From positions 248,001 to 312,000 of IMG/VR virus record IMGVR_UViG_3300047445_000186: a stretch of 64,000 nucleotides of DNA; one strand, given 5' to 3'. The notes under the pieces are model-generated. The model was not told the DNA's origin. It did not search any database and saw only the letters and a list, made by a program, of their open reading frames with translations. Below are positions 2,882 through 48,258 of this stretch, in pieces. Positions within the stretch are counted from its first letter, which is position 1. The number at the start of each line of letters is the position of its first letter. The position numbers were made by a program, and so were the translations under genes.

Positions 2882-2964
2882 GGGGGCGAGTTTAGAGGCA
2901 TTAGGTGGCAGATAGCGTTACAGTTTTCTGTGAACGTTACGAATTCATGGCGTACAATACATCC

Positions 2965-3249
2965 ATGAACGAACAACCCCTCCTGCAAAAAGTCGAACAG
3001 GTCTACACGGTCAGGATCGTCGGTGAATTCACGATGATCACGCCGAAGGACGACTTCAGCCAACCGTTCCGAATCCGGGAAAAGGACGGAGTGTTCATCG
3101 TGTCCAAGGGCTGGACCGAGCGGGTCTGGGAACCACTGAAGTGGCAGAAGAAGAAATCCTGCGCCACGATGAACGAGGTGTACGACTACCTCATCAAGGA
3201 CTGGAACAAATCCGCCAAGATCGCCGGCATGAGCAGGACTCCCATATGA
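2965..3249 (+). CDS. Small early hypothetical protein, probably leaderless
   Basis: TACAAT(2953)-ACATCC-ATG. Confidence 0.7.
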   Translation: MNEQPLLQKVEQVYTVRIVGEFTMITPKDDFSQPFRIREKDGVFIVSKGWTERVWEPLKWQKKKSCATMNEVYDYLIKDWNKSAKIAGMSRTPI

Positions 3250-3455
3250 ACGGCGAGTACGTCCACAAGCCCCAGCCGAGGCCCGGCAAGTGCCACATCT
3301 TCAAGTCGTGGAACGGGTTCTGGTACCTGAACTCGAACAACGTGGAGGACTGGGTCCTCGCTGATAAGGCCCGCGTGCACTGCATCACGCGGAACAACGT
3401 CATTCGCGAACGCAATCGCGAGATTCTCGAAGCATCGCTAGGAGTTCTGAAATGA
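3246..3455 (+). CDS. Small early hypothetical protein
   Basis: ATGA-coupled chain of small ORFs. Confidence 0.65.
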   Translation: MNGEYVHKPQPRPGKCHIFKSWNGFWYLNSNNVEDWVLADKARVHCITRNNVIRERNREILEASLGVLK

Positions 3456-3721
3456 GCCAACTCGTGATCTACAACTGGTCCTGCAAGAAGCTCAAGGACC
3501 AGCTCGTTCTGACCGGCTTCGTGTCTGGTCATCCCACCGTTCCCGACGGGAACTTCGTGAACGCGACTTCGCCGGTCGTCGGGATCGTGCAGAAGCACAA
3601 TCAGACGTTCGCGCAGACCAAGAGCGGTCGCGAGTACCGCCTCGGCTTCGTTTCGACTGAGCACGAGACGTCGCACCCGAACGCCCGCGAGGGCTTGATC
3701 AAACTGTTCTCGAAAGGCTGA
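3452..3721 (+). CDS. Small hypothetical protein
   Basis: ATGA-coupled; GFVSGHP..DG..TS..TKSGREYRLG pattern. Confidence 0.7.
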   Translation: MSQLVIYNWSCKKLKDQLVLTGFVSGHPTVPDGNFVNATSPVVGIVQKHNQTFAQTKSGREYRLGFVSTEHETSHPNAREGLIKLFSKG

Positions 3722-3723
3722 TC

Positions 3724-4008
3724 ATGACCGCTTTCTACCCAAAGCCACACGGACCGGAACCTCGCTTCGAGCTGAAGGTGTACTGGGCTGACGCGTGCAA
3801 TTGCTTGCACGTGAACACGGTCGTCTTGCACACTCCCTCGAGCGTCGAAGCGTTCGCGAAGCGCGAGATGAAGTGGGAAGCCACGGTCCGCTGCGTCTGC
3901 CCCGCTCTCGAGATCGACGTGGAAGGCGACTTCGTCGGCGTCTCGCACCCCCAAGACCTGTTCGAGCGTCGGAAAAGCGACGCTGTCGTGGAGAATTGGC
4001 AGCTATGA
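3724..4008 (+). CDS. Small hypothetical protein
   Basis: Tiled in early array. Confidence 0.6.
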   Translation: MTAFYPKPHGPEPRFELKVYWADACNCLHVNTVVLHTPSSVEAFAKREMKWEATVRCVCPALEIDVEGDFVGVSHPQDLFERRKSDAVVENWQL

Positions 4009-4169
4009 CACGAGTGAAAGTCACGATCACGTCTGAAAATGGCGAAGTGCTTGACACAATCTTTGTGGATGGCACATACCTTGAGGGTACCGCCGCCCAC
4101 CCCGAGAACATGCTTGGCGCTGCGATAGTTGAAGTCATCGAAGAAAACTTCGAGACCTCTGAGAGCTGA
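4005..4169 (+). CDS. Small hypothetical protein (MTRVKVT...)
   Basis: ATG overlaps previous stop. Confidence 0.55.
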   Translation: MTRVKVTITSENGEVLDTIFVDGTYLEGTAAHPENMLGAAIVEVIEENFETSES

Positions 4170-4227
4170 TCGTTACACTTTCGGCGATCGTTACAAGGTG
4201 GGCGCGTGGATGTTGTACAATACATCC

Positions 4228-4524
4228 ATGAACAAAATCACCTTCTCCACCGGCCCCGGTTCCAAGGACATCCTGCTTAACGGCATCGTGATCGGTCACA
4301 TGACCGGTGGCCGCGAAGTCTGGGTGGAATTCGGCAATCACGAGTTCGTCGCGCGCTTCAAGTACCGCTCGCCCATGGTGGTCGCGAAGTACACGATCCG
4401 CGAGCTCCTGAAGCGCCGCACACCCGAGGAAATCCTCGCGAAGGTCAAGGCTGGTGTGTACGCCGGAACGCAGCTCCAAGAGCTCGGCATCCCACACTAC
4501 TGGGCGACGAAGGAAGCACGATGA
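4228..4524 (+). CDS. Small early hypothetical protein, probably leaderless
   Basis: TACAAT(4216)-ACATCC-ATG. Confidence 0.7.
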   Translation: MNKITFSTGPGSKDILLNGIVIGHMTGGREVWVEFGNHEFVARFKYRSPMVVAKYTIRELLKRRTPEEILAKVKAGVYAGTQLQELGIPHYWATKEAR

Positions 4525-4796
4525 TCGAGATCGAAATCACCTCCGCCGAATCCACGAACGGGTGGTTCCTGATCTGCGGTCATGGTTGCGACACGGTCGC
4601 CGAGGCCGAGCGGTACATGCAGATGAAGCCCTCGGCCCTGCGGTACCGCGTGAACGGCGGTGATTGGGTCGGCCCAGAAGCTGCGCCTCCAGCTCCGCCC
4701 GCTCCGAAGCCGGAACCCCTCGATCACGCGGTCAAGATCAACCAGACCGCGCTGAAAGAAGTCATCCGCATTCTGAAGGAGTTCGAACAGCGATGA
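4521..4796 (+). CDS. Small hypothetical protein
   Basis: ATGA-coupled. Confidence 0.65.
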   Translation: MIEIEITSAESTNGWFLICGHGCDTVAEAERYMQMKPSALRYRVNGGDWVGPEAAPPAPPAPKPEPLDHAVKINQTALKEVIRILKEFEQR

Positions 4797-4996
4797 TCAC
4801 CACACGCATTGCCCCAGGAATGTACAAGATCTCGGACGGAACGAACGAGGTTGAAGTCTTCCGGAACGATTTCTGGGACGGCCCTGCGTGGATCGCGCTA
4901 GCCTGCTGGGACAAGCACACCGTCACAGACCCGGTGCCGACCAAGCGCCAGGCTGTGATTCACGCGAAACAAATGCTCGAAAGGAAAAAGTCATGA
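4793..4996 (+). CDS. Small hypothetical protein
   Basis: ATGA-coupled. Confidence 0.65.
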   Translation: MITTRIAPGMYKISDGTNEVEVFRNDFWDGPAWIALACWDKHTVTDPVPTKRQAVIHAKQMLERKKS

Positions 4997-5316: not shown

Positions 5317-5799
5317 TCAGCACTCCTGAGTTTCCTTGTAGTACTCATCCTCGATGAACGCGTGGTAATCGGCGAACGCGTCACCATCGACCTTGCGGTA
5401 CGTGTACCCGTTCAGCTTCCAGCGCTTTATGAACCTGTTGTACAGCTTCGCTCTGCTCGGGCCCTTTGTCTTGTCTGCTTCGAAGAACACGACTGATGGC
5501 TTGAGCATCTTGAGCGCATCCTCAAGGAATTTCTTCGCGGCTGCGAAGATCGCGAGCTGATCACCATCCCCCGTGGCGTCGTACGTTTCGCCATCTTCAT
5601 TGTAGCGATCGTCGTCCTCATCGTCCTCGCCATCGCCTAGTTGGACGAATGTGAAGTTCCATTTGCTGTCGTCCGGCCACCTGTCCATTCGAAATTCAAT
5701 CTCGCGGCCACCGAACTTGGCTCGAGCCCGGTAGGATTTCCCATTGTCTTTTACGACAGTGAGAGTGGTGTTCGTGTTCAGGATTTCGAAGATTTTCAT
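5317..5799 (-). CDS. Late hypothetical protein with MKIFEIL leader
   Basis: Minus strand TAAATA-GGAG-T-ATG directly upstream. Confidence 0.75.
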   Translation of the reverse strand: MKIFEILNTNTTLTVVKDNGKSYRARAKFGGREIEFRMDRWPDDSKWNFTFVQLGDGEDDEDDDRYNEDGETYDATGDGDQLAIFAAAKKFLEDALKMLKPSVVFFEADKTKGPSRAKLYNRFIKRWKLNGYTYRKVDGDAFADYHAFIEDEYYKETQEC

Positions 5800-5892
5800 A
5801 CTCCTATTTACGAGGTGTTCGTCCCGGTCCTGATTCGAGGACTCCAGTGCGGTGTATCTTTCTTACGATACACCCTCATCACTGGAGTTCAA

Positions 5893-7008
5893 ATGTTTCC
5901 CTCGATCGCAAAACTTGACGACTTGCTGCCGTTCGTTCAATCGAACAAGCAGATTCGCGTAAAGCCGTGCGACACGACTGGCCATACGGTCGTGTGCTAC
6001 ATGGTTCAAGACGAAGACACGTTCGACGGGGATCATCATGAATTCGCACGTGAATGCCGTGGTATCTCGTTCGACAAGAACGGCAAGATCAGCGCCCGCA
6101 CGATGCACAAGTTCTTCAACGTTGGCGAGCGTCCTGAAACGCAGCCTGACGTGATCAACTGGCGGGAAGTCACGCGGATCATGGAGAAGCGCGACGGCTC
6201 GATGGTAACACCTGTGTTACTCACCGAGAAGACCTTCAAGTTCAAGACGAAGAAGTCGTTCACGACTCCCGAAGCTGGACTGGCCGACTCGATCTGCCGT
6301 GAAGATCTGAACAAGTACCAGTGGGTGCTCCGGCTCCTGCAAGGCGGGTACACGCCGACTTTCGAGATCACTTCGCCACGGTTCCCGATCGTGGTCCGAT
6401 ACGAGAAGGACGAGCTCACGCTCCTGCATGTTCGCGAGAACGCGACTGGCCGGTACCTGTCGGCTGACGATCTGAAGTGGCTGCTTCCACCGTTCGCGCT
6501 TGTTCTCGATCACTCTGGCGAGTTCAAAGTGGACGGCGTTGTGAGCTGGGACAAGCTGAAGGTTGCGTCTGAAACGGCCGAAGGCATGGAAGGTTGGGTG
6601 ATCCAGTTCCGATCAGGCGAGATGGTGAAGCTGAAGACGAAGTGGTACATCGATTTGCATCACTCCGTGACGTTCACACGTTGGCGCGACATTGCTCGCA
6701 CCGTCTGTGCTGATCAGTCTGACGACTTGAAGGCTGCGTTCGCAATGGTTGGTCGCTCTGTCGAGCCGATCCTCCAGGTAGAGCGGAAGATCAAGTCTCG
6801 GATCGAGACTGTGGAACTGCTGGTGCGAGCATGTGTGCTGCACGCGAAAACGAACGGAATGTCGATCAAAGAAACGGCGCTGCACTTCAAGGAGAACGAG
6901 TTCTTCGGGCTGATCATGCGTTCGTTCCGTGATCAAGAAATCAACTGGGTAGAGTTCTACGAGAAGCACTACCTTGAACGAGACTTTGGATTGGAAGTTG
7001 TAGCATGA
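5893..7008 (+). CDS. rnlA: RNA ligase 1 (T4 Rnl1-like)
   Basis: KFFNVGE, motif I EKRDGS, TFE, EGWV..VKLKT; SD GGAG before ATG 5893. Confidence 0.92.
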   Translation: MFPSIAKLDDLLPFVQSNKQIRVKPCDTTGHTVVCYMVQDEDTFDGDHHEFARECRGISFDKNGKISARTMHKFFNVGERPETQPDVINWREVTRIMEKRDGSMVTPVLLTEKTFKFKTKKSFTTPEAGLADSICREDLNKYQWVLRLLQGGYTPTFEITSPRFPIVVRYEKDELTLLHVRENATGRYLSADDLKWLLPPFALVLDHSGEFKVDGVVSWDKLKVASETAEGMEGWVIQFRSGEMVKLKTKWYIDLHHSVTFTRWRDIARTVCADQSDDLKAAFAMVGRSVEPILQVERKIKSRIETVELLVRACVLHAKTNGMSIKETALHFKENEFFGLIMRSFRDQEINWVEFYEKHYLERDFGLEVVA

Positions 7009-13401: not shown

Positions 13402-13584
13402 TTGCCGTCTTATGAGTTGGACGGCATGACTACATTGTAACGAGACCTTTTCAAAAACCGTTACTGAATTCGAGTTCAGGTCGGGGAACTCCGAATTAAA
13501 ATCGAGTCATGGGATCAAGATAATGAGACGTAATACAAACGTATTACTTTGGATATAAATTTTCACCTTCCTTGAGGGATCGAA

Positions 13585-17218: not shown

Positions 17219-17580
17219 AAGTCACCGAACTGCTTGAGAGCGGCGGTGACCTGCGCGCGAAACTGATCGACAAGATGCGACTCCAGTTCGAGAGGAACGG
17301 GAAGTACATCAATTGTCGCCTTGCTGTGCAGCTCACGGTCGATGTTCCAAAGCTCGAAGAACTGCCGAAAGTGAAGCCGAAAGAGATGATTCTCGGCGAC
17401 ATTCTCGCTTGGGGAATCGCGCACTTCGCGATCTACCTCGGGAACGGCGAAGTTCTCGAAGTCCCAGGCTGGGGCGATCAAGTACAAATCACGCCTTTGA
17501 AGGCCGTTGAAGCGGATTACGACAAGGTCCGCACTGTTTACCGAGTTCCTGCAGATCAACTGCAGAAAGCCCTACAATGA
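17215..17580 (+). CDS. NlpC/P60-like cysteine hydrolase with MKVTELLE leader
   Basis: INCRLAVQ (Cys) then GDILAWG.AHFAIYLGNG (His). Confidence 0.7.
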   Translation: MKVTELLESGGDLRAKLIDKMRLQFERNGKYINCRLAVQLTVDVPKLEELPKVKPKEMILGDILAWGIAHFAIYLGNGEVLEVPGWGDQVQITPLKAVEADYDKVRTVYRVPADQLQKALQ

Positions 17581-18110
17581 AACTACAAGAACTAGCTAGC
17601 GCAGAGCGCTTTAATTCCACCACGCTGCTTGAAAGCGGCAACGCAGCCCTGCGCGCGAAACTCACTGATGATGAGTGCTTAGTTCTTGCGTTATTGATTC
17701 ATGATAAGGGGCACATCATGGCCCGCGGTAATCATGACAGCGATTTAGATAGCGCGATCAGCAAGCTAAAGATGAAGTCTACTATCCCACTTTATCGTGG
17801 CGTGTCTGATAAGGAGTTAGCAGAGATTATCGCTGGTGAAGCTGATCACTATCTCTCCTTCTCAGAAGATCGAAATGTTGCAAAGGGTTTTGGCGCGAAT
17901 GTGATTACGCTAAAGCCTGGGGCTGTGGGTCTCTGTTACTGGAAATGGGGAATCGCAGATAATAAAGCGCTCGCGAAAAAGTATGGCAAGCAATGGGCTG
18001 AGGACCAGGATATTCAGTACATGATCGATTCATTTGAGGAAGAGAAAGAGTGGGTGTTCCCGTTTGAGACACGGTTCACCCAAGTCGGACCTCTAGAGTT
18101 CAAGCAATGA
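17577..18110 (+). CDS. ADP-ribosyltransferase-like protein (R-S-E type) with MKLQEL leader
   Basis: LYRG, YLSFSED, EEEKEW. Confidence 0.75.
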   Translation: MKLQELASAERFNSTTLLESGNAALRAKLTDDECLVLALLIHDKGHIMARGNHDSDLDSAISKLKMKSTIPLYRGVSDKELAEIIAGEADHYLSFSEDRNVAKGFGANVITLKPGAVGLCYWKWGIADNKALAKKYGKQWAEDQDIQYMIDSFEEEKEWVFPFETRFTQVGPLEFKQ

Positions 18111-20679: not shown

Positions 20680-20797
20680 TCCCGAAATCCGAGTGCACTC
20701 GGACTCCTCCGTGATTAAATAAGAACTGGTGCTGATGAGGCACCTTTTCTTTTACCTGCGAACAGTGGGTACCTATCACAACCTCGGAGTACGAGAC

Positions 20798-21613
20798 ATG
20801 TCAGACCGCACCACCATCGGTGATCGGATGAAGAGCTACGAAGCGCCTTCAACGACCCGCAAAGCTTTCAAGGGCCAGCCCCTCATTGTCCGCCTGGACG
20901 GAAGCTCATTCCACAAATTCACCAAGGGCATGAAGCGCCCATTCGATCTGGTTCTGAGCCAGCTCATGATCGACACCATGAAGTCCATGGTCGAGCGATA
21001 CAACGCGAACATCGGGTACACGCAATCGGACGAGATCACGCTCGCCTGGTACATGGAGCCATTCGAATCTCGCGAGCTCGAGTTCGGTGGCCGCTTCCAG
21101 AAGTTCGAAAGCGAACTTGCTGCATGGTGTTCTGTGAAGTTCAACTCGCTCCTTCGCGAAACCGAGTACGCCAAGAAGGCAGAGATGCTGCCGTACTTCG
21201 ATGCTCGCGCGTTCGTCGTGCCGAACTTGACCGAAGCGATGCACTGCTTCCTGTGGCGCCAGCAAGATTGCACGAAGAACGCGATCAGCATGGCCGCTCA
21301 GTCGATGTTCTCGCACAAGGAACTGCAAGGGAAACATGGGCCTGAGATGCAGGAGATGATGTTCCAGAAGTTCAACGTGAACTTCAACGACTACCCTTCG
21401 CACTTCAAGCGTGGCACGTTCGCTCGACGCGTGAAGCGCGAGTGGTTCCCGTCCGATGCAGAGATCGAAGCGATTCCGGAGAAATACCGGCCAAGTGGGC
21501 CAATCCTCCGCTCGTTCGTGCAGACCGAAGACATCTGGCTATCGAAGCAACCGAGCGGAACGCAAGCTCTGTTCGGTGACGCACCGATCGTTACAAATGT
21601 TACGGTGTCATGA
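20798..21613 (+). CDS. tRNA(His) guanylyltransferase Thg1-like protein
   Basis: RMKSYE, IVRLDGSSFHKF, YTQSDEITL, FDAR, WRQQDC..NAI. Confidence 0.92.
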   Translation: MSDRTTIGDRMKSYEAPSTTRKAFKGQPLIVRLDGSSFHKFTKGMKRPFDLVLSQLMIDTMKSMVERYNANIGYTQSDEITLAWYMEPFESRELEFGGRFQKFESELAAWCSVKFNSLLRETEYAKKAEMLPYFDARAFVVPNLTEAMHCFLWRQQDCTKNAISMAAQSMFSHKELQGKHGPEMQEMMFQKFNVNFNDYPSHFKRGTFARRVKREWFPSDAEIEAIPEKYRPSGPILRSFVQTEDIWLSKQPSGTQALFGDAPIVTNVTVS

Positions 21614-21739
21614 GATACAATCTGAGCATGAACACCCACAAGGAAACTTCATGCTCAACATTGCACGCCTTGCAGGCGAGCTGCTAGCCATCAAGGCAAA
21701 GCTCGCCTGGAATTCGGTCCAGATCTGTTGGTACTCGTG

Positions 21740-23261: not shown

Positions 23262-23367
23262 ACCCGTGATCCTGTGATCGTTGTAATTTGAGATTTATTT
23301 AGACCCGGTAGCCAGAAGATCCCAATGTCCAGGTGCATACGAAGGCACGATCGTTACAATTGTTCTC

Positions 23368-23733
23368 ATGTTCCATCCTGTTCTGTGGCGATGGCACAAC
23401 CACCAAGGGATCAACATGAGACGTTTTATTCTGGTTACGGCTACGCAGTCGGAACCGGCCGGGGTGAAGACACACTCTGGCATCAAGAAGCTCAAGCGAG
23501 GAGTCGGGATCGTTGACTTCATGAGCGAGTACCTCGAGCAATTCGCAGGTCAAAAGGAAATCTACGCACGTGGCGAAACGCAGGTCGCGTTCGCTCGCGA
23601 AGATAACAAGTCCATTCAATGGGCATTCACCGAGTTCGCAGAAGACGAGCTCATTCGGGCCGTGTCGAACCTGACCCGTGAAGAACTCCTTCGCGATCTG
23701 AAAGAACTGCTCCCGCTGAAGGCTGCGCTGTGA
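23368..23733 (+). CDS. Hypothetical protein
   Basis: CGTTACAAT-N7-ATG. Confidence 0.65.
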   Translation: MFHPVLWRWHNHQGINMRRFILVTATQSEPAGVKTHSGIKKLKRGVGIVDFMSEYLEQFAGQKEIYARGETQVAFAREDNKSIQWAFTEFAEDELIRAVSNLTREELLRDLKELLPLKAAL

Positions 23734-25155: not shown

Positions 25156-25520
25156 GCAGAAACGTTTACTACATTGATGTCGGCAATTACGGCCGAAAGC
25201 AAGTCGAAGAATACATCGCCGCGGTGCGTGAAGGAATCCAAAACCGAGAAGCACCTACTCTCGAAGAACTCGAGCGCAATGTGTGGGGTCCTGCTGATGA
25301 AGCTGAGCACGGCATCAAGCTCACGCCGAAGTCGCACAACATGTACGCGGGCGTGAACCTCGGTCCAGGTAGTGTGAACTACCGATTCACGTTCCTGATG
25401 CGTGAGCTCGAGAATCGCTTCCCGAATCCAGCACCGTACCGCTCTGATCGGATGCCAGAACAGGCATACCTCGAAGCGATCGACGCGCTCCTCGCTGACA
25501 CGTACAATCGAACCCGCTAA
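25152..25520 (+). CDS. Hypothetical protein with N-terminal T4 gp20 portal-like motif
   Basis: RNVYYIDVGNYGRKQVEEYIAAVREGIQNR. Confidence 0.65.
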   Translation: MSRNVYYIDVGNYGRKQVEEYIAAVREGIQNREAPTLEELERNVWGPADEAEHGIKLTPKSHNMYAGVNLGPGSVNYRFTFLMRELENRFPNPAPYRSDRMPEQAYLEAIDALLADTYNRTR

Positions 25521-25559
25521 AGTGCAACCCGAGTCTGACCACGTTCTTACAATGTGGTT

Positions 25560-25874
25560 ATGACTTGGAAACTCTTCCTCGACGACTTGAGAGCGCCGCC
25601 CGATCAAACTTGGGTGGTAGCTCGGTCCGTCCCTGCCGCGATTCTGTACATCACAGAGTACGGCTTCCCTTACGAGATGAGCCTTGATCACGATCTCGGC
25701 ACTGGAACAGATGCGCCGCAGCTTCTGCTCTGGATTCTCGAAGAGCTCATGGATGAGCACATCCACCCCTCAGCTTTGAAGGTCAAATTCGGCGTTCATT
25801 CGGCGAATCCTGTCGGGGCGCTCAATCTGAACAATCTCTGGAAACACATTCTCCGATATGACAACATTCTCTGA
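25560..25874 (+). CDS. Cyclic-phosphate-processing receiver-like domain protein
   Basis: KLFLDDLR.P, SLDHDLG, VHSANPVG; TACAAT-N6-ATG. Confidence 0.78.
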   Translation: MTWKLFLDDLRAPPDQTWVVARSVPAAILYITEYGFPYEMSLDHDLGTGTDAPQLLLWILEELMDEHIHPSALKVKFGVHSANPVGALNLNNLWKHILRYDNIL

Positions 25875-32216: not shown

Positions 32217-32244
32217 TCTGCACAATTTTCGTTACAATTAGACT

Positions 32245-32541
32245 ATGAAATTTATTGCCACTTTGTCTGACGGGACAACTCACGAGGTTGAGTTCGTGAA
32301 TGAGCCCGGAATCACGTTCGAGTCGGTCGAAATCGTGACTCCAAACGGAATTGGGTACATCGCAGGTGCCCAGACATGGAACAAGCTCCAATCGCTCGTG
32401 CCTCTCGACGCGCTGATCAACGGACTGCCATTCACCTTGGCTACCGCTGCTGGCGAGACGAAGCACTTCCTGTTGGAAGACTGCTATGTTCTCGCTGACA
32501 AGCTCACGGTGTACGTGCGGTTCGGTAAGCAGGTGTTCTGA
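32245..32541 (+). CDS. Hypothetical protein, probably leaderless
   Basis: CGTTACAAT-N6-ATG. Confidence 0.65.
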   Translation: MKFIATLSDGTTHEVEFVNEPGITFESVEIVTPNGIGYIAGAQTWNKLQSLVPLDALINGLPFTLATAAGETKHFLLEDCYVLADKLTVYVRFGKQVF

Positions 32542-38403: not shown

Positions 38404-38505
38404 ATGGCAAATAGCGCGCACAAAGTTCCTGGGGACGTTCTGACCCGCGTCCTCGTTGCAGTGGTGATCGGTATCTGGTGCTTCGTGCTCTACCGAGCTT
38501 TGTAA
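38404..38505 (+). CDS. Possible 33-aa membrane peptide (not in track)
   Basis: GAGG SD; VLVAVVIGIWCFVLYRAL. Confidence 0.4.
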   Translation: MANSAHKVPGDVLTRVLVAVVIGIWCFVLYRAL

Positions 38506-38580
38506 CAGATTCCTGCGCCGTTACAGATTGACCCGGCGGATGTTGTACAATCACCCATCGACAACGAAACGGAGTACAGC

Positions 38581-38799
38581 ATGAACGGAACCGCAGCAAA
38601 GTTTGTTCGCTTCGAGCGCAAGAACGGGAAGCTCGCCCTCGTGTACGATGTGATGAACAAGACCGGTGAATATGTGATGGCACAGTTCACCACGTCCCCG
38701 CAGTTCCGCTCGATCGGAGCAGCTCGGAAAGCGATCGTCCGCGTCGATGCAGCGCTCGCCAAGACCGGCGCTTTCCCGAACTGCTGCGCCTGGTTCTGA
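38581..38799 (+). CDS. Small early hypothetical protein
   Basis: TACAAT 38546, GGAG SD. Confidence 0.7.
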   Translation: MNGTAAKFVRFERKNGKLALVYDVMNKTGEYVMAQFTTSPQFRSIGAARKAIVRVDAALAKTGAFPNCCAWF

Positions 38800-39209: not shown

Positions 39210-39279
39210 GGGCTTTAGAGTCATACTTCTCGCTGCTAAATAGTCCTCAGAGGGCCACGTCGTGGCCGCAGAGGACTCC

Positions 39280-40503
39280 ATGACATCTCCGGTCGATACA
39301 TCCGTCAAATCTTTCGATAGCACCATGCTCGGTGCTCCAGCCCTGAGTGGTACTGCTGGCACCACAATTGGCGTGCTTGATGCTTGCTTGGTGAACGGGT
39401 TCGACACACGTGCTGCTTCATCTATCGTTGTTTCAGGTGGTGTGGCTACGGTGAGCTACTCGGGTGCAGTGCACTCAGCTCGGTTGAACAGCGTTATTCT
39501 CGTGTCTGGCGTGACTGACATCACGTCGTTGAATGGTGAACAGAAGATCACGGCAGTCGGTTCTGGCTTCGTGAAGTTCGCGACAGCGGCCTCGCCAGGT
39601 ACCGCAACCGGCACGATCTCGTTTAAGATGGCTCCACTCGGATGGGTGAAGCCCTTCAATGGTACCAATATCGGCGTGTACCAGTCGAGTGACATCACGT
39701 CAACAAAGTGCTACCTTCGCGTTGACGATACTGGTACCCAGACATGCCGCGTTATGGGGTACGAAACCATGACTGACGTGAACACTGGACTTGGTGGATT
39801 CCCGCTGTCTGGTCAGATTCTTGGTCCTGTCACAGGTGGTGGTTGGTGGTACAAGAGCGCTCAGGTCAACTCGACCCCAGTTGTGTGGTCTATTCACGGT
39901 GACGGCAAGATCTTCTACATCAACATTCAGATGGGAACTAGCACGAACGCCTCGTATCAAATGACGTCTGGGCGTGTGTTCGGTGATCCAATTCCGTACA
40001 GACCTGGCGGCGATCCATACTGCTGCATTTTGAACTATGCCACTGCATCTGGTGGTATGGCCGGTGGTGTTGGAAATACGTACAGCTCATCTGCAAATTG
40101 CTCATTCGCGACACCTCGCGATTTCACTGGAATTGGATCCGCAGTTGGGAACTTCTTGATGCAGTTCGGAATCCCAGTAGGCTCTAACTCAAATTCAGGA
40201 ATTACGAACTTGGCTGGGGCATTCCCATCGTACATCGATGGAAGTCTTTGGTTGTTCCAGAAATTTCTTGCCGCAACTTCAACTGGCATGCCGCGGGCGC
40301 TCATGCCAGGTCTTTATATTTGCGGGCAGTCTAGCATCTATAACAACTTTAAGCAGGGCGATACGACCCCAGGCACAGGTGCTCTTGCTGGTCGATGGCT
40401 ACGTGCAGCAACGTCAAATGATGATGCAACCGTGCCGAACACGGCAAGCACAACGGCGAACACAGGTATCATTTTCTTTGATGACACTGGGCCGTGGAGA
40501 TAA
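39280..40503 (+). CDS. Tail-fibre-associated structural protein, paralog A1
   Basis: MTSPVDTSVK..LDACLVNG..APLGW..DDTGPWR; late promoter 39237. Confidence 0.75.
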   Translation: MTSPVDTSVKSFDSTMLGAPALSGTAGTTIGVLDACLVNGFDTRAASSIVVSGGVATVSYSGAVHSARLNSVILVSGVTDITSLNGEQKITAVGSGFVKFATAASPGTATGTISFKMAPLGWVKPFNGTNIGVYQSSDITSTKCYLRVDDTGTQTCRVMGYETMTDVNTGLGGFPLSGQILGPVTGGGWWYKSAQVNSTPVVWSIHGDGKIFYINIQMGTSTNASYQMTSGRVFGDPIPYRPGGDPYCCILNYATASGGMAGGVGNTYSSSANCSFATPRDFTGIGSAVGNFLMQFGIPVGSNSNSGITNLAGAFPSYIDGSLWLFQKFLAATSTGMPRALMPGLYICGQSSIYNNFKQGDTTPGTGALAGRWLRAATSNDDATVPNTASTTANTGIIFFDDTGPWR

Positions 40504-42720: not shown

Positions 42721-42769
42721 CGGGAGGGCTAAATAGTCCTCAGAGACCACTGCAGGTCTGAGGCTATTC

Positions 42770-43975
42770 ATGACATCTCCAGTAGATACATCCGTAAAAT
42801 CATTCGACTACTCAATGTTGGGAGCGGCTGCCCTGAGCGGCACGGTCGGCTCGTTGTTGCCAATTCTTGACCAATGCCTGGTGAATGGGTTTGACACTCG
42901 AGCAGCGTCAAGCATTGTCGTTTTTGGCGGGATCGCGACAGTAAGCTACACCGGCATTACGCACTCTGCGCGTTTGAACTCGGTTATTCTCGTGACTGGT
43001 GTGACTGACCTTACGGCCCTGAACGGAGAACAGAAGGTCACCGCCGTCGGCTTCGGTTTCATTAAGTTCGCAACCAGTGTTGCGAACGGTACCGCGACCG
43101 GTACGATCTCGTTCAAGATGGCTCCACTTGGATGGGCGATTGCGCAGACAGGTACTAATCTTCGCGCGTACAAATCGACCGATGTTACATCGACCGGCTG
43201 CATTCTTCGTGTCGACGACACCGTTGCCACGTCGTGCCGTGTCGTTGGATACGAAAGTATGACCGACATCAATACTGGTCTTGGCGCATTCCCGACTGCT
43301 TCGCAACAGCCTGGCGGCGGGTACTGGGTGAAGAGCATTACGGCCTCGGCGGGTACTGTCCTCTGGTCTATCCATGGGGATGGGAAGGTGTTCTACCTGA
43401 ATGTTCAGCCTGGTAGCGTTTCTGGCGCAGGTTTTCAGATCACTTCTAATCGTATGTTCGGAGACATTATTCCGTTCAAACCGGGTGGTGATCCTTATGC
43501 GTGCGTAATGAACTACTCGATCACGTCAACGATTGGCGCGATGCACGACGCCGGTGTTGGTGGGTCGGCTGTCACTCAGTTCGCTCAACCACGCGACTTC
43601 ACGGGGCTTGGATCAGCGGTGATCTCGTTTATCTACCCGTACAACGGCACGACTCTGAACACAATTTCCGGCATTACCTCGATTGCAGGTCCATTCCCAT
43701 CTCAGGTAGATGGTGGCATTTGGTTGAGCTCAAAGTATCTGAACACCACCACCAGCGTTGGCATGCGTGGTCAGCTTCCAGGCGTATTGCACTGTGGTCA
43801 GAGCGGGGTATGGGCCTCGTTTAAAATGGGTGACACGACGCCCGGCTCTGGCCCCCTCGCCGGGCGTTCGCTGCGCGCTACAACAGCAGGGCACGATACG
43901 ACAGGTAGTAACACCACCTCGTCAACTGCAAACACCGGGATCATGTTCTTCGACGACACTGGGCCTTGGCGATAA
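42770..43975 (+). CDS. Tail-fibre-associated structural protein, paralog A2
   Basis: Colinear with A1; late promoter 42730. Confidence 0.75.
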   Translation: MTSPVDTSVKSFDYSMLGAAALSGTVGSLLPILDQCLVNGFDTRAASSIVVFGGIATVSYTGITHSARLNSVILVTGVTDLTALNGEQKVTAVGFGFIKFATSVANGTATGTISFKMAPLGWAIAQTGTNLRAYKSTDVTSTGCILRVDDTVATSCRVVGYESMTDINTGLGAFPTASQQPGGGYWVKSITASAGTVLWSIHGDGKVFYLNVQPGSVSGAGFQITSNRMFGDIIPFKPGGDPYACVMNYSITSTIGAMHDAGVGGSAVTQFAQPRDFTGLGSAVISFIYPYNGTTLNTISGITSIAGPFPSQVDGGIWLSSKYLNTTTSVGMRGQLPGVLHCGQSGVWASFKMGDTTPGSGPLAGRSLRATTAGHDTTGSNTTSSTANTGIMFFDDTGPWR

Positions 43976-43978: not shown

Positions 43979-46900
43979 ATGGCTACGCACAGATATTGGC
44001 GCGCTAAAAATCTTCAGGCGTACGGCGCAACCGGCCTAGACATCACTGAGTACCAGCTTTTTGTTGGCAGCACACGTGTTGACGGCCCGGCGACGCTCAC
44101 CTCCAACATCGCGCCATCAACTGGTTCATTGTCATATCTGCAGGACGGGCTAGCTACGAACAGCGCAATCTGGCTAGCAGCTGATGTTCCCAAACTCGTG
44201 CTCTCGTGGGACTTTGGTTCGACATCCGGTAACTGGGTTGATGTGAATGACATTCAGCTCGGTGGTGGCGCGCTTCGGCAGAATTTTCTGGCGTTCTCCA
44301 CTCTTCAGTACTCGGATGATGCCAGCACTTGGACAGATGCATTCATTAGCACTACGAACGGCTATGTTGCGGGTGCGTACGCGTGGCCTGGAAGTTTTAC
44401 GGCCACCACGAGTAGACCATTCTCGTACAATAGTCTGACAGTGTTGCTTCACGGTGATGGTACTGACGGTGGGACCACGTTCACGGATAGCTCAACGAAC
44501 GCATTCACGGTCACCCCCACAGCTACAACAACAAGTGCAACGCAGAAAAAGTTTGGTACGACTGCGCTTTCGTTCAATGGCGCGACCTGTAAGCTGTTGA
44601 TCGCGCACAACAATGCGTTGGTTCCGAGTGGAGATTTCTGCATTCAGTGTTACGTATGGGTTGCTTCTGCGACGGCTGCGACTCATCGATTCATCGTGAA
44701 CAAATCGATCTCAAGTGGAGTCTGTCCATACGCATTTGCTGTGATGTCGACAGGTGTGTTGTCTGCTAATTCATACAACGCGGCTGGCACGTCGATGGTG
44801 AACTTCACCGCGACTCAGTTAATCACAGCTCAGACTTGGACACACGTAGCGTTCACACGTCAGGGCTTGATTTACCGTATTTTCATGAATGGTCAAATCG
44901 TTGCGCAGGCAACGGCGCCATCAACTGGCGCGCTGTACAACAACAATACGCACCCGATGTGTATTGGGAACGTGTCAGACAGCATTTACCCTATGTTTGG
45001 AACAGGTGGTACCGGGTACATTGACGAGTTCTCATTTGATGCGAACAACGCTGTGTACACTGCGCCATTCATTCCACCTGCGGCTCCAGGCTCAGGTGGT
45101 GGAATCGTGCTTACGAACAATTTCGCGATCTCATCTCCGACTGAGCCGTCTACGGTAGGAAATGGTGTATCATCGTATGGCGTATCAGCGGTGTCAATTG
45201 CGCCGGAAACGGTCGCAGATGTTATCGCCATGTCAGCGCCAACAGTGTACGGTGTAGCTCCACCTCCAGTTTTCTTTGGTGTCAGCACGACATTGATGCT
45301 CTCATATGGTGCTGGACTGCGAGCGCCTAATAACACGCGTGGTCGAAATGATTTCGTCACTGGTGTTCTCGGCTCTGGCGTCGGACGAATCGACGGTGTT
45401 GTGCAAGTTCCTGGTACGCCAAATCAGCCAGTGAAGCGTCGTGTTCGTCTGTACAGGCAAGAAGACGGATACCTTGTGCGCGAGGCCTGGAGTGATTCAA
45501 GCACTGGGGCGTTCTCATTTGACTACGTTGACGAGAAACAGCTGTACTACATCTGCGCATTTGACCACACGAATGCGTTCGTTGGGCTGATCGCTGACAA
45601 CTTAACGCCATCCCTGCTTGAAACTTCTACTGTTGACGCATACGCAGGTGCTCTGAAGAGACTGATCACGATCACTGGCGCAGGTGGTGCAGGTACAGGA
45701 TACGCTATGTTGTTCAAGATTGGGGAGAGCAGCGGTTCTGCCGGCTCCGATTTCAACCTTGAAGCTGTTACAACGACGTTCCCACTTGATAAGAACATCC
45801 CTGGCGATGTGCAGTTCACTGACGTCAGTGGAAGCCCGCTTCCACAGTGGGTCGAGCAAGTCACCGGGACGGCACCGAATCGTGTTGCATGGTTCTGGGT
45901 TAAAGTTTCGGCCGATCTGAGTACAACGCAGTCGATTTACTGCACGTACCGGAATGGTATGAGCACCGCAAGCAATGGCAATACCGTGTTCCTGTTGTTC
46001 GATGACTTCGATGACGGCACGCTCGATACTGGAAAGTGGTCGAACGTCACTGGATCAGGCAGTTATGTAATCTCCGGTTCTGAATTCGTACTCACCGGTA
46101 CTGGTGTTGGTCGCGCGCTTTATTCGGCCACGACGTTCGGTGATGGAATGGAAGTGGTTGGTAAGGTCGGACCATCGGCTACCTCGCTGAGCTACAACGG
46201 TAAGTTCGGTTTCGAAACGCAGTACATCTTCCAAAATGACTGGGACAGCCAAGGATCATCGGAAGTTGTAGTTGGCCCATCGACTAAGACACAACTTGAC
46301 GCGCGCTATCAGACCACGTATTACAGAATGCGAATCCGGCGTGCGGGTGGCGCAGGTAGCATGTTGGTCAATGACGTGGTGAAGCATACACAAGGTTCTG
46401 GGATTGGGACTTCATCTGTGCCAGTTTGGCTGATGAACGTGTATGACGCCACTGTTGCCGGTAAGGTTGATTGGATCGCAGTCAAGAAGTACATGCTCAC
46501 CGAGCCTACGTACTACTCGGCCGACACCTCCATTCCTGCGGCGACTACCGTGATCAACATGACTTTCGATACCGGGAACGGTTCGACTACGTTCACGGAT
46601 ACTGGTTCACAAGCATCAAGTTGGCAGATCGGTACGGGCGCGGTTCAGTGTTCGACGACAGCGGTTCTTGAAGGCGTTTCATCGCTCTTTGTTCCTGGTG
46701 GTGGCTTCGCCTATCTGTACACTACAGCGTACTCCGCGAACATGCTTCCAGCTACCTCAGACTTCTCGCTGAAATTCAAGGCGCGTTCGTCGTCATGGCT
46801 GCGCTTTGACGCTTCTGGGTGCTATTTGATCTCGATTCAGGGCGCGGTAGGAAATGGAGCAGACACGCAATTCGCGATCGCAACGAATCTGAATACATAT

Positions 46901-47170
46901 CTGGCATTCGCGTATAGTGACGGCACGACGCGTTCAGCAGTGACTGGGACTACTCCTGTCCCGGTGAATGTGACCGTGTCATTCGAGTTCAAGCGAGTAG
47001 GCAGTACACTCTCATTGCTGATGAACGGCGTGCTTCAATGTTCTGCTACTCTGTCTGGCGCGTTGAACGTGCCGTCTGGTCAGCAGTGGCGAATCGGTGC
47101 ACCGGCCGGTGCACAAGGCGGTGCATTTAACGGGATGTATTTCGACTCGCTCTCGCTTACTGTTGGTTAA
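43979..47170 (+). CDS. Tail fibre / receptor-binding protein B2 with LamG-like and DUF2341-like domains
   Basis: MATHRYWR start; WTHVAFTRQG; DVQFTD..LPQWVE..AWFWVKV..IYCTY. Confidence 0.75.
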   Translation: MATHRYWRAKNLQAYGATGLDITEYQLFVGSTRVDGPATLTSNIAPSTGSLSYLQDGLATNSAIWLAADVPKLVLSWDFGSTSGNWVDVNDIQLGGGALRQNFLAFSTLQYSDDASTWTDAFISTTNGYVAGAYAWPGSFTATTSRPFSYNSLTVLLHGDGTDGGTTFTDSSTNAFTVTPTATTTSATQKKFGTTALSFNGATCKLLIAHNNALVPSGDFCIQCYVWVASATAATHRFIVNKSISSGVCPYAFAVMSTGVLSANSYNAAGTSMVNFTATQLITAQTWTHVAFTRQGLIYRIFMNGQIVAQATAPSTGALYNNNTHPMCIGNVSDSIYPMFGTGGTGYIDEFSFDANNAVYTAPFIPPAAPGSGGGIVLTNNFAISSPTEPSTVGNGVSSYGVSAVSIAPETVADVIAMSAPTVYGVAPPPVFFGVSTTLMLSYGAGLRAPNNTRGRNDFVTGVLGSGVGRIDGVVQVPGTPNQPVKRRVRLYRQEDGYLVREAWSDSSTGAFSFDYVDEKQLYYICAFDHTNAFVGLIADNLTPSLLETSTVDAYAGALKRLITITGAGGAGTGYAMLFKIGESSGSAGSDFNLEAVTTTFPLDKNIPGDVQFTDVSGSPLPQWVEQVTGTAPNRVAWFWVKVSADLSTTQSIYCTYRNGMSTASNGNTVFLLFDDFDDGTLDTGKWSNVTGSGSYVISGSEFVLTGTGVGRALYSATTFGDGMEVVGKVGPSATSLSYNGKFGFETQYIFQNDWDSQGSSEVVVGPSTKTQLDARYQTTYYRMRIRRAGGAGSMLVNDVVKHTQGSGIGTSSVPVWLMNVYDATVAGKVDWIAVKKYMLTEPTYYSADTSIPAATTVINMTFDTGNGSTTFTDTGSQASSWQIGTGAVQCSTTAVLEGVSSLFVPGGGFAYLYTTAYSANMLPATSDFSLKFKARSSSWLRFDASGCYLISIQGAVGNGADTQFAIATNLNTYLAFAYSDGTTRSAVTGTTPVPVNVTVSFEFKRVGSTLSLLMNGVLQCSATLSGALNVPSGQQWRIGAPAGAQGGAFNGMYFDSLSLTVG

Positions 47171-47223
47171 CCCGAGCCCATTGCTGGGACGCTCTGCAGT
47201 TGTACACTCGTTACAATTGACAG

Positions 47224-48258
47224 ATGCAGCAGAAGCTACTTCGGGATCTCATTGAAACGCAAGTCCATCTCGGTCAGGAATCCTCGACCGGGTTCAGGGC
47301 CGTGCGATGCGCGAGCTGCAATGACCACAGTGAAAGAGCGGGGTTCAAGTTCGACGGTGAGACTGTCGGGTACTCTTGCTTCAACTGCGCGGCAAAGTTC
47401 AGGTACGAGGAAGGGAGTGGCAAGCTCGGGCGATCAGCGAAGCGGATCCTTGAGGCGTTCGGTATCTCTCAGAATCAACTGAATGAAGTCACTGGCTCAA
47501 GCTTCTTCAACAAGAGTCAAGAGCCGAAAGAGATCACTTTGGAGTCAATGGCTCCGAAAGTCAGGCTGTTCACGCCTGAAGTCGCGCTCCCTCCGAAATC
47601 GCATCCGCTAGGTTCACCATTCGCTGATGAGCTTCAGGCTCCGATCATTGAGTACCTGATGAAGCGAAAGATCGATCCACTGGAGGTCCAAGCACATTTC
47701 AGTCTCGATCCGAAATTCCTGTACCGAGTGATCATGCCTTGCATGAGAGAAGGTAAGGTCATTTACTGGCAGGCTCGGACGATTCTGGATGGCGTGAAGC
47801 CGCGGTACATGTCGCCTGGGATCAACAAAGACGCGGTTCTCTGGGGGTACGACAATCTCTGGCGCGATCACGATCAGCCGCTGTTCTGCACTGAAGGTAT
47901 CTTCGATGCAGCAGCCCTGAACGGTGTTGCGTTACTGGGATCGAAGTTGAACGAATCGAAGCTCGAGGTTCTGAATCGGTGCAGGCGACGGAAGATCGTT
48001 GTAGTCGATCGCGATGATAATGGTGGAGAGCTTGCGCAACTCGCGCTTGAGAACAAGTGGGAGATTACGTTCCCACCCGCTGGTGTCGATGACGTGAACA
48101 AGAGTGTCCAGAAGTACGGACGACTGCTGACAATCTGGACCCTACTAAAGAACGCTACAGTCCCACAAGGGCTGAAGGCCGCCGATGGTCTGGCCGTACA
48201 ATCAAAGCTTGCTCTCGGAATGGAGCTAGCACTCGCAAAATTATCTAGAAGGAAATAA
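47224..48258 (+). CDS. DNA primase (T4 gp61-like)
   Basis: Zn finger CASC..CFNC, YWQAR, TOPRIM TEGIFDA and VDRD. Confidence 0.88.
   Translation: MQQKLLRDLIETQVHLGQESSTGFRAVRCASCNDHSERAGFKFDGETVGYSCFNCAAKFRYEEGSGKLGRSAKRILEAFGISQNQLNEVTGSSFFNKSQEPKEITLESMAPKVRLFTPEVALPPKSHPLGSPFADELQAPIIEYLMKRKIDPLEVQAHFSLDPKFLYRVIMPCMREGKVIYWQARTILDGVKPRYMSPGINKDAVLWGYDNLWRDHDQPLFCTEGIFDAAALNGVALLGSKLNESKLEVLNRCRRRKIVVVDRDDNGGELAQLALENKWEITFPPAGVDDVNKSVQKYGRLLTIWTLLKNATVPQGLKAADGLAVQSKLALGMELALAKLSRRK

What the first reader, a model, noticed from the sequence alone, without database searches (positions are those of the whole stretch)
2953..47226. Systematic leaderless mRNA architecture (TACAAT-N6/7-ATG), including the primase
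Seen: TACAAT followed by 6-7 nt then ATG with no SD at 2965, 4228, 23368, 25560, 32245 and 47224 (primase); 10 nt at 54853. Known: this spacing places the TSS on or near the A of ATG; leaderless mRNAs initiate on 70S ribosomes without S1 or anti-SD, and T4 ModB ADP-ribosylates S1. Inference: the phage could disable canonical initiation with its ARTs or kinases while key early and replication mRNAs stay translatable.
Basis: partly seen in the sequence, partly recalled or inferred. Interest (0 to 1): 0.72.

Follow-up and report, generated by a model that had tools for sequence, protein, structure and literature searches.

The report
Leaderless genes in a jumbo phage
An uncultured 332-kb T4-like soil phage places a promoter -10 box (TACAAT) exactly six bases before the ATG of about 30 early or replication genes, so these mRNAs most likely begin at their start codon; this is a known mechanism (as in lambda cI) used on an unusual scale.

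Summary
All seven cited sites exist. In the window, TACAAT-N5-10-ATG occurs 10 times against 1.0 expected. In the whole 331,776-bp phage genome, TACAAT is the hexamer most enriched six bases before ATG (19 of 101 sites, P=6e-16).

Gene-opening starts lie 5, 6 or 7 nt after TAnAAT in 4, 24 and 4 cases. Spacings of 8-20 nt are nearly empty, and a second group sits at 22-30 nt, many of them with SD leaders. All 32 close starts are ATG. They lack SD, and their 5' ends are predicted to be unusually unstructured. Family-profile or orthologue alignments begin at residues 1-17 of most that have a match.

The TAnAAT boxes belong to two conserved promoter classes. The primase arrangement (GTTACAAT-N6/7-ATG) is kept in relatives at 64-80% identity, while the spacer sequence drifts.

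The leaderless reading is therefore well supported, but only indirectly, because no RNA data were listed.

Caveats:
- The conserved protein at 23368 begins at an SD-led ATG at 23416.
- 54853 has a 10-nt spacing.
- The 70% relative has a leadered primase.

The idea that the phage disables canonical initiation has no support. Most of its genes, including those behind its T4-late-like promoters, have leaders.

The parts
2908..2964 (+). Class A promoter: GTTACA-type boxes at 2917 and 2936, TACAAT at 2953-2958, then the 6-nt spacer ACATCC
   Evidence: It belongs to a family of about 17 repeated cassettes in the genome.
2965..3249 (+). Leaderless candidate gene, 94 aa, function unknown
   Evidence: ATG lies 6 nt after TACAAT and the anti-SD energy is -1.5. 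There is no PHROG or Pfam match. Public gene callers disagree on the start (94, 100 or 114 aa). The upstream in-frame ATG at 2947 lies just upstream of the -10 box.
4171..4227 (+). Class A promoter: boxes at 4172 and 4190, TACAAT at 4216-4221, and the same spacer ACATCC
4228..4524 (+). Leaderless candidate gene, 98 aa, function unknown
   Evidence: N6 spacing, anti-SD energy -3.4. Gene callers give 98 or 104 aa. The alternative ATG at 4210 is part of the conserved GGATGT promoter element.
21590..21687 (+). Class A-like promoter (TACAAT at 21616) whose N6 ATG at 21628 opens only 19 codons. An SD-led ATG at 21651 opens 29 codons.
   Evidence: This is not a convincing leaderless gene.
23321..23367 (+). 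Class B promoter: CCYR box at 23321 and TCGT-TACAAT at 23355-23360
23368..23733 (+). Gene with an N7 ATG at 23368. The conserved protein begins at Met17 (ATG 23416), which is preceded by AAGGGA.
   Evidence: The G001 orthologue starts MRKFILVTAA, aligned to residue 17, and is itself leaderless there (TACAAT-N6-ATG). Gene callers give 121 or 105 aa. The start is ambiguous.
25513..25559 (+). Class B promoter: CCYR box at 25513 and TACAAT at 25548-25553
25560..25874 (+). Leaderless candidate gene, 104 aa, with a cREC_REC receiver domain
   Evidence: Pfam PF20274 aligns residues 3-93 to profile positions 1-85. phrog_1479 aligns residues 1-99. The G001 orthologue aligns from residue 1. There is one consistent public gene call.
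32233..32244 (+). TCGT-TACAAT box plus 6-nt spacer. The promoter overlaps the 3' end of the family B DNA polymerase gene (29412-32216).
32245..32541 (+). Leaderless candidate gene, 98 aa, an ORFan
   Evidence: N6 spacing and no SD at the ATG (+0.5, +1.2). It was found only in this phage, where it is called at 98 aa. A downstream GTG at codon 18 has a moderate SD (-6.6), so the start is not proven.
47169..47223 (+). Class B promoter of the primase gene: a CCCGAGCCC box, a GG..GC box, GTTACAAT (TACAAT at 47212-47217) and the spacer TGACAG
   Evidence: Alignment A2: GTTACAAT and ATG are invariant in 5 lineages at 64-100% protein identity, and the spacer varies. The promoter sits in the 53-nt gap after the gene that ends at 47170.
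47224..48258 (+). DNA primase, 344 aa, the best-supported leaderless candidate
   Evidence: phrog_47 E=4e-32. Most of the 120 listed homologues (of 237) are 335-346 aa long with about 100% coverage. No SD at the ATG (+0.7, +1.2) and no downstream SD-led start.
54802..54852 (+). Class B promoter: CCYR box at 54802, a hairpin, TCGT-TACAAT at 54837-54842, then a 10-nt spacer
54853..55527 (+). PD-(D/E)XK exonuclease, 224 aa. The start codon is confirmed, but the N10 spacing implies a leader of about 3-4 nt.
   Evidence: phrog_298 E=1.7e-48 and PF12705. Orthologues in G001, G003, G004 and G005 align from Met16 of the longer TTG ORF, which is the ATG at 54853. All four relatives have a leader of about 20 nt or more; only G004 shows a clear SD.
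38501..38583 (+). Contrast case: a class A promoter (TACAAT at 38546) with ATC where the others have ATG, then the leader ATCGACAACGAAACGGAG and an SD-led ATG at 38581
58769..58842 (+). Contrast case: a class A promoter (TACAAT at 58814) with a leader and an ATG at 58840
42729..42772 (+). Example of the third, T4-late-like promoter class: CTAAATAG, then a 33-nt hairpin leader and an ATG at 42770
17577..18110 (+). Alt-like ADP-ribosyltransferase domain protein, 177 aa.
   Evidence: phrog_832 'RNA polymerase ADP-ribosylase' E=2.6e-7. PF03496 scores below its cut-off (14 bits).

Best explanation
The window is part of an uncultured T4-like jumbo phage (331.8 kb, 54% GC, from rhizosphere metagenomes). 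No RNA polymerase of its own was detected, so it probably uses the host enzyme.

Promoters. Its early or middle-type promoters have a sigma70-type -10 box (TAnAAT, mostly TACAAT) and no canonical -35. There are two classes:
- Class A has tandem GTTACA boxes, with 20 bp between the proximal box and the -10.
- Class B has a CCYGA box 35 bp upstream of the -10, often with TCGT or TGT directly before the box.

Leaderless arrangement. In about half of the promoters that sit before a gene, the box lies exactly 6 nt (sometimes 5 or 7) before the ATG of the first gene. Transcription then starts on the A of ATG, as at lambda PRM-cI. The mRNA has no leader and no SD, and it is presumably bound through its 5'-terminal AUG (the 70S/IF2-favoured route described for E. 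coli). The other promoters of the same classes carry leaders, mostly of 22-30 nt and often with an SD. About 30 genes, mostly for replication and nucleotide or RNA metabolism, are affected.

What is shown:
- the motif, its spacing and its enrichment;
- starts that are ATG only;
- true N-termini;
- weak 5' structure;
- conservation in relatives.

What is inferred:
- the start site itself;
- the use of host RNA polymerase;
- the early or middle timing, by analogy with T4;
- the purpose.

The most economical purpose is that only transcripts begun at the gene's own promoter are translated. Read-through from upstream genes presents an internal ATG without an SD and stays silent. This would give promoter-gated expression in a genome where nearly all genes lie on one strand.
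For: 1. Enrichment. TACAAT is the top hexamer 6 nt before ATG (19 of 101 sites, P=6e-16).
2. Spacing. Gene-opening ATGs sit at N5, N6 and N7 in 4, 24 and 4 cases. Spacings of 8-20 nt are almost empty, and a second mode lies at 22-30 nt.
3. Start codon. None of these starts is GTG or TTG, although 23% of strong-SD genes use a non-ATG start. In S. meliloti all 171 mapped leaderless start sites begin with AUG (PMC3616915).
4. No alternative start. There is no SD at these ATGs. A downstream SD-led in-frame start (dG -5 or lower) exists in only 8 of 33 cases, most of them weak or far downstream.
5. True N-termini. Profile matches begin at residues 1-17 for the clamp loader, helicases, dTMP kinase, Tpt1, cREC_REC and a Rossmann-type MKIAVIG start.
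6. 5' structure. The first 25-35 nt are less structured than SD-led gene starts (p about 1e-5) and than internal ATGs (p about 1e-13).
7. Real promoters. A CCYR box lies at a fixed distance in 48 of 184 TAnAAT sites, and GTTAC sits at -26 and -36. The same classes occur in a 45%-GC relative.
8. Conservation. Seven or eight of about 19 orthologue pairs between G000 and G001 keep the -10-N6-ATG arrangement with different spacer sequences. The primase keeps GTTACAAT-N6/7-ATG in relatives at 80, 75, 72 and 64% identity, and TACAAT-N5-ATG at 52-54%.
9. Polymerase. No phage RNA polymerase or sigma70 region-2 match was found. The closest cultured relative, RsoM2USA, has no annotated RNA polymerase (PMC8504454).
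Against: - There is no transcript data. Only DNA runs were listed, and no RNA run, so no start site has been observed.
- The promoters lack a canonical -35, so an unknown phage factor could shift the start site.
- The pyrimidine preference at -1 is not significant (14 of 24).
- Several small genes (2965, 4228, 32245) have no homologues that could confirm their N-termini, and gene callers disagree on the first two.
- The conserved protein at 23368 starts at an SD-led ATG 48 nt downstream.
- The arrangement is weaker in more distant relatives: the N6 peak is 8 in G001, 4 in G003, 4 in G004 and 0 in G005.
- The host, and its ability to translate leaderless mRNA, are unknown.
Confidence: 0.75

Rival explanations
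1. Leaderless mRNAs let key early and replication genes escape a phage-imposed block of canonical (S1- or SD-dependent) initiation, caused by ADP-ribosylation or phosphorylation of the ribosome.
For: An Alt-like ART domain protein is encoded at window 17577-18110. The leaderless candidates are enriched in replication and nucleotide-metabolism genes. T4 ModB is reported to modify S1 (my own knowledge).
Against: - Only 33 of about 444 genes are leaderless candidates. Most genes, including the cistrons that follow leaderless ones, start internally, and many have an SD.
- Of the 67 late-type promoter motifs, 55 have a gene start within 70 nt, and 39 of those leaders are 16-35 nt long.
- Orthologues switch freely between leaderless and SD-led forms, the primase included.
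- No Pkinase or RegB match was found.
- The ART match is to an enzyme that modifies RNA polymerase.
Confidence: 0.06
2. The TACAAT boxes are promoters, but the true start codons lie downstream and are SD-led. On this view the ATG at N6 is incidental, or part of a conserved initiation region, especially CCAT(G/C) in class A.
For: The conserved protein at 23368 starts at 23416 behind AAGGGA. At 21616 the N6 ATG opens only 19 codons. Class A has a conserved CCAT(C/G) at this position. Gene callers disagree for 2965 and 4228.
Against: For most genes the profile or orthologue alignment reaches residues 1-5 of the N6 ATG product. Of the 33 candidates, 25 have no downstream in-frame start with an SD. 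The spacers of class B are not conserved, yet the ATG position is. A sharp peak at N6 made of in-frame, gene-opening ATGs cannot arise by chance.
Confidence: 0.1
3. TACAAT is not a -10 box read in the sigma70 manner. It could be bound by a phage-specific factor or polymerase whose start site lies elsewhere, or it could act at the RNA level as an SD-independent ribosome-binding element on longer transcripts.
For: There is no canonical -35. The upstream boxes are unlike any I know. No transcript data exist.
Against: - The TAnAAT pattern, with fixed T, A and final T, is the hallmark of sigma70-family -10 recognition.
- The same box also sits 22-30 nt before SD-led starts, so it works independently of the ATG.
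- The conserved elements lie 20-35 bp upstream at fixed distances, as promoter parts do.
- No phage polymerase was found.
- The preferred spacing is exactly the canonical distance from a -10 box to +1.
Confidence: 0.08

Closest known systems
Lambda PRM-cI leaderless mRNA (also P2 gene V and Tn1721 tetR)
   Same: A -10 hexamer is followed by 6 nt and then ATG (lambda: TAGATT-TAACGT-ATG, from my own knowledge). Transcription starts on the A, there is no SD, and AUG is required.
   Different: In lambda this is one regulatory gene on a weak, activator-dependent promoter. Here about 30 genes, many for replication enzymes, sit behind two phage-specific promoter classes. The start sites are not mapped here.
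Genome-wide leaderless genes of Actinobacteria, Deinococcus and some Proteobacteria (the GeneMarkS-2 leaderless class; S. meliloti has 171 leaderless start sites)
   Same: A -10-like box lies a fixed short distance before the start codon, the starts are AUG only, and the leader lengths are bimodal (PMC6028130, PMC3616915, PMC4007540).
   Different: Those are cellular genomes. This is a phage that otherwise uses SD, and the host is unknown.
T4 middle promoters (MotA/AsiA sigma appropriation) and T4 late promoters (TATAAATA, gp55)
   Same: The replication gene set is T4-like. The promoters keep a sigma70-type -10 box but replace the -35 with a phage-specific upstream box. A separate [CG]TAAATA[ACG] class resembles the T4 late motif.
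   Different: The boxes (CCYGA about 35 bp before the -10, or tandem GTTACA) differ from the MotA box in sequence and position. No MotA, AsiA or gp55 homologue was sought successfully. To my knowledge T4 is not known for leaderless mRNAs.
Jumbo phages with mapped start sites (phiKZ, AR9)
   Same: They are large phages with several promoter classes.
   Different: The phiKZ dRNA-seq study detected no leaderless transcript (PMC8244752). AR9 leaders are 26-491 nt long (PMC5312081). Both use their own RNA polymerases.

Membership tests
Leaderless mRNA genes | The transcription start coincides with (or lies within about 2 nt of) the A of the start codon | not testable with these tools
   No RNA run was listed. 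The start is inferred only from the -10-N6 spacing.
Leaderless mRNA genes | The start codon is AUG (GUG and UUG are poorly used at a 5' end) | tested here: met
   32 ATG, 0 GTG and 2 TTG were counted at N5-N7, and none at N6 is non-ATG. The TTG examined (TACAAT site 217366, N5) has an SD-led ATG just downstream; the N7 one was not examined. Strong-SD genes use a non-ATG start in 23% of cases.
Leaderless mRNA genes | No Shine-Dalgarno sequence is available before the start | tested here: met
   The anti-SD duplex energy is above -5 for 27 of 33 candidates. The sequence upstream is the promoter itself.
Leaderless mRNA genes | The ATG is the authentic N-terminus of a real protein | tested here: met
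   Profile and orthologue alignments start at residues 1-17 for most candidates that have a match. Exceptions are 23368 and the unverifiable ORFans 2965, 4228 and 32245.
Leaderless mRNA genes | The 5' end is unstructured | tested here: met
   The mean folding energy of the first 25 nt is -0.72, against -1.99 for SD-led genes and -3.31 for internal ATGs.
Sigma70-type promoter | A -10 hexamer of the form TAnnnT with conserved A at position 2 and T at position 6 | tested here: met
   TACAAT, TAGAAT, TAAAAT and TATAAT are used, and GTTACAAT is invariant before the primase gene.
Sigma70-type promoter | A -35 hexamer (TTGACA-like) 16-18 bp upstream | tested here: not met
   The consensus scan calls none of the TACAAT sites in 46000-56000. 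The upstream boxes lie 20 bp (GTTACA) or 35 bp (CCYGA) before the hexamer.
T4 middle (MotA-dependent) promoter | A MotA box (TGCTT core) centred near -30, plus MotA and AsiA genes | tested here: not met
   No such box appears in the aligned promoters. MotA and AsiA genes were not searched for. The resemblance is functional only.
T4 late promoter | A TATAAATA motif at -10 without a -35, read by gp55 | tested here: inconclusive
   [CG]TAAATA[ACG] is enriched upstream of genes (P of 1e-12 to 1e-13, 67 sites). A gp55 homologue was not tested. This class is not the leaderless one.

The most novel reading that the evidence does not exclude
A clade of uncultured T4-like jumbo phages may have made leaderless initiation a programmed layer of gene control. 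About half of its early or middle transcription units would then be translated only from transcripts that begin exactly at the ATG. These genes would be independent of SD and S1, silent on read-through RNA, and possibly resistant to a host- or phage-imposed attack on canonical initiation, such as ART modification of S1, SD-cleaving nucleases or translation-targeting defence systems.
Probability: 0.12. Interest if true: 0.8.

Novelty: new member of a known kind. Interest (0 to 1): 0.5.

Why it matters
If the start sites are confirmed, this would be the largest set of leaderless genes I know of in a phage outside the actinobacteriophages. It would also be the first in a T4-like jumbo phage; phiKZ showed none, and AR9 leaders are at least 26 nt long.

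The practical uses are:
- It gives a rule for annotating starts in this clade: take the ATG 6 nt after TAnAAT. Public gene callers currently disagree on the starts of at least three of these genes.
- It defines three promoter classes for a group of soil phages that has no cultured member closer than 34% primase identity.
- It offers a natural test bed for how leaderless and SD-led versions of the same gene interchange during evolution.

It does not by itself show any takeover of translation.

Tried and rejected
- RNA evidence. One search of any kind found only DNA runs from rhizosphere metagenomes. One RNA search on window 2900-4600 listed none.
- Near-identical phage records. There was no megablast match in the phage collection.
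- Phage RNA polymerase or sigma. PF04542, PF00562 and PF00940 gave nothing. The PF00940 control rang nowhere, so that negative result is weak.
- Kinase and RegB. PF00069 and PF10715 gave nothing. ART-PolyVal (PF18760) gave nothing, again with a silent control.
- Host inference. The genome-contig scan returned only two MAG contigs, labelled Acinetobacter sp. and Micavibrio sp., which is not informative.
- Homologues of the 32245 ORFan. None exist beyond the phage itself.
- Pyrimidine at -1. The count was 14 of 24, which is not significant.
- RsoM2USA. TAnAAT-N6-ATG occurs 30 times against 12 for the reversed control. I did not check whether these open genes. Its primase sits 28 nt behind a GTAAATAT motif and is not leaderless.
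- My crude start chooser mis-assigns some SD-led starts. Counts that depend on it (the gene after a leaderless gene, and the late-motif distances) are rough. redid the late-motif distances independently of it.
Full report
**What the window is.** The window is bases 248,001-312,000 of a single 331,776-bp contig. It has 54% GC. IMG/VR lists it as a virus record that is 94% complete. The same sequence is held by several rhizosphere metagenome runs.

The gene content is T4-like:
- family B DNA polymerase and an RnlA-type RNA ligase;
- primase, followed by a DnaB-type helicase;
- clamp loader, topoisomerase II, dCMP deaminase and further helicases.

The closest cultured phage is Ralstonia phage RsoM2USA, at only 34% primase identity. 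It has no annotated RNA polymerase (PMC8504454). No sigma70 region 2, Rpb2 or T7-type polymerase match was found here either.

**The observation.** All seven cited sites are present. In the window, TACAAT-N5-10-ATG occurs 10 times against 1.0 expected, and none of 100 shuffles reached 10. TACAAT itself occurs 25 times against 11.5 expected, almost always on the coding strand.

In the whole genome, 19 of 101 TACAAT sites have ATG exactly 6 nt downstream, where about 1.5 are expected. TACAAT is the most enriched of all hexamers at that position (P=6e-16), ahead of the SD hexamers.

I then relaxed the box to TAnAAT and required the start codon to open a called gene of at least 50 aa:

| Spacing from box to start | Gene-opening ATG starts |
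|---|---|
| N5 | 4 |
| N6 | 24 |
| N7 | 4 |
| N8-N20 | almost none |
| N22-N30 | broad second group |

So leaders are either absent or long enough to hold a ribosome-binding site. The intermediate lengths, which would serve neither route, are avoided.

**Are these real promoters?** The boxes fall into classes with conserved upstream parts.

- Class A has about 17 copies. It carries GTTACA-type boxes starting 26 and 36 bp before the hexamer. It also has a conserved GGATGTwG just before TACAAT and a conserved region after it, yCAyCCAT(C/G)GACAAC. Where that region reads CCATG, the ATG opens a gene (window 2965 and 4228; genome 82676 and 225602). Where it reads CCATC, a leader of about 25 nt follows, often ending in GGAG (window 38546 and 58814). 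This fits a start site on that A.
- Class B has about 45 copies. It has a CCYGA or CCCA box with its CC 35 bp before the hexamer. TCGT often lies directly before TACAAT.
- A third class, [CG]TAAATA[ACG], has 67 sites and resembles the T4 late motif. Where a gene start lies within 70 nt (55 sites), the distance is 16-35 nt in 39 cases.

None of the TACAAT promoters has a canonical -35. They therefore look dependent on an activator or a modified polymerase, as T4 middle promoters are. That comparison is an analogy, not a membership claim.

**Are the ATGs real starts?** Profile matches begin at the very N-terminus for most candidates that have a match:

| Gene | Residues aligned | Profile positions |
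|---|---|---|
| cREC_REC (PF20274) | 3-93 | 1-85 |
| Clamp loader | 5-302 | 9-308 of 314 |
| phrog_2488 helicase | 14-575 | 19-573 |
| Tpt1 | 4-180 | 7-180 |
| dTMP kinase | 4-164 | 6-185 |
| Rossmann-type MKIAVIG start | 1-33 | 1-33 |

Most of the 120 listed primase homologues (of 237) are 335-346 aa long with about 100% coverage. Twenty-five of the 33 candidates have no downstream in-frame start with an SD.

All close-spaced starts are ATG, whereas 23% of strong-SD genes use GTG or TTG. This is the signature expected of leaderless initiation. In S. meliloti, all 171 mapped leaderless start sites begin with AUG (PMC3616915).

The first 25-35 nt of these ORFs are predicted to be much less structured than the starts of SD-led genes (p about 1e-5) or internal ATGs (p about 1e-13).

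**Comparative evidence.** I fetched a 336-kb relative, G001, which has 70% primase identity but only 45% GC. It has the same promoter classes and an N6 peak of 8.

Of about 19 orthologue pairs, seven or eight keep the -10-N6-ATG arrangement with different spacer sequences and even different -10 variants, for example TAGAAT against TATGAT and TAAAAT against TACAAT. The others switch to an SD-led leader.

For the primase:
- GTTACAAT-N6/7-ATG is kept in lineages at 80, 75, 72 and 64% identity. GTTACAAT, the ATG and the upstream boxes are invariant, while the spacer varies.
- Two lineages at 52-54% have TACAAT-N5-ATG.
- One lineage at 44% has TATAAT-N7-ATG.
- G001 and L005 have a leader inserted after the same TACAAT box; in G001 it is about 37 nt long and carries an SD.

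The arrangement is therefore under selection but interchangeable, and it is not a fixed requirement of the primase.

**Caveats on the cited sites.**
- 23368: the G001 orthologue starts at the residue aligned to Met17. In this phage that is the ATG at 23416, behind AAGGGA. The N7 ATG may add 16 residues or may not be used at all.
- 54853: the start codon is confirmed by four orthologues. The 10-nt spacing implies a short leader, and the relatives are leadered.
- 2965, 4228 and 32245: these are ORFans or have no homologue in the four relatives searched. Public gene callers disagree on the first two.
- 21616: it opens only 19 codons.

A 177-aa protein at 17577-18110 matches the catalytic end of the T4 Alt-type 'RNA polymerase ADP-ribosylase'. 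No Pkinase or RegB match was found. Nothing ties this enzyme to S1.

More importantly, 33 candidates stand against about 410 genes that start inside their mRNAs. Those include the cistrons just after the leaderless ones and the genes behind the late-type promoters. A general block of canonical initiation would stop the phage.

I favour a simpler purpose, which remains an inference. A start codon with no SD is translated only when it is the 5' end of the RNA. Expression is then gated by the gene's own promoter and is blind to read-through. That would be useful where nearly all genes lie on one strand and promoters overlap the end of the preceding gene, as at 32233 behind the polymerase gene.

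**Novelty.** The mechanism is the classical one of lambda cI and of leaderless genes in many bacteria. What is new is the scale and the setting. About half of the -10-type promoters that sit before a gene are leaderless, in a T4-like jumbo phage clade known only from metagenomes. The two jumbo phages with mapped start sites show no leaderless transcripts (phiKZ; AR9).

There is no transcript evidence, so the start sites remain inferred.

Noticed in passing
window 1602, 16799, 19360, 35682, 39236, 42729, 49819, 50175, 56113 (+); 63466, 23302, 9831 (-): There is a third promoter-like class, [CG]TAAATA[ACG], which resembles the T4 late promoter TATAAATA. It has 67 sites genome-wide. Of these, 55 have a gene start within 70 nt, mostly 16-35 nt away. 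The motif is strongly enriched upstream of genes (P of 1e-12 to 1e-13).
   Followed up: partly
window 39236-39282 and 42729-42772: Two late-like motifs are followed by near-identical hairpin leaders (tcctcagag...ctgagg). They precede paralogous genes that begin MTSP, which lie next to two large Laminin_G_3 (ConA-like) proteins at 40507-42720 and 43979-47170. The hairpins may be a leader element.
   Followed up: no
window 17577-18110: A 177-aa protein matches the C-terminal ART domain of the T4 Alt-type RNA polymerase ADP-ribosylase (phrog_832, E=2.6e-7). This fits a phage that modifies the host RNA polymerase.
   Followed up: partly
window 5641-7008, 20729-21613, 25560-25874; genome 246883-247431, 49328-50479: There is a cluster of RNA repair and tRNA enzymes: a T4 Rnl1-type ligase, a Thg1-like tRNA-His guanylyltransferase, a cREC_REC cyclic-phosphate receiver, a Tpt1 RNA 2'-phosphotransferase and a PNK-like ATPase. 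Three of them are leaderless candidates. The set suggests a counter-measure against tRNA-cleaving defence systems.
   Followed up: no
genome-wide; window 2908-2964, 4171-4227, 38501-38580, 58769-58839: The class A promoters are repeated cassettes of about 75 bp. They have GTTACA boxes one helical turn apart and a conserved transcribed start, ATCGACAACGAAACGGAG. They are reminiscent of the repeated early-promoter cassettes of T4-type phages, and the protein that binds the boxes is unknown.
   Followed up: partly
L003 (G001) and L005, upstream of the primase gene: Two relatives share a similar leader (ataccac..tatttgtt), about 37 nt long in G001, inserted between the same TACAAT box and the primase start. 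A leaderless gene appears to have been converted into a leadered one; an SD is evident only in G001.
   Followed up: no
window 13425-13439 (-): On the minus strand, TCGT-TACAAT-N6-ATG opens only a 5-codon ORF upstream of the gene at 12931-13401. It may be a promoter with a mini-ORF or simply a leadered transcript.
   Followed up: no
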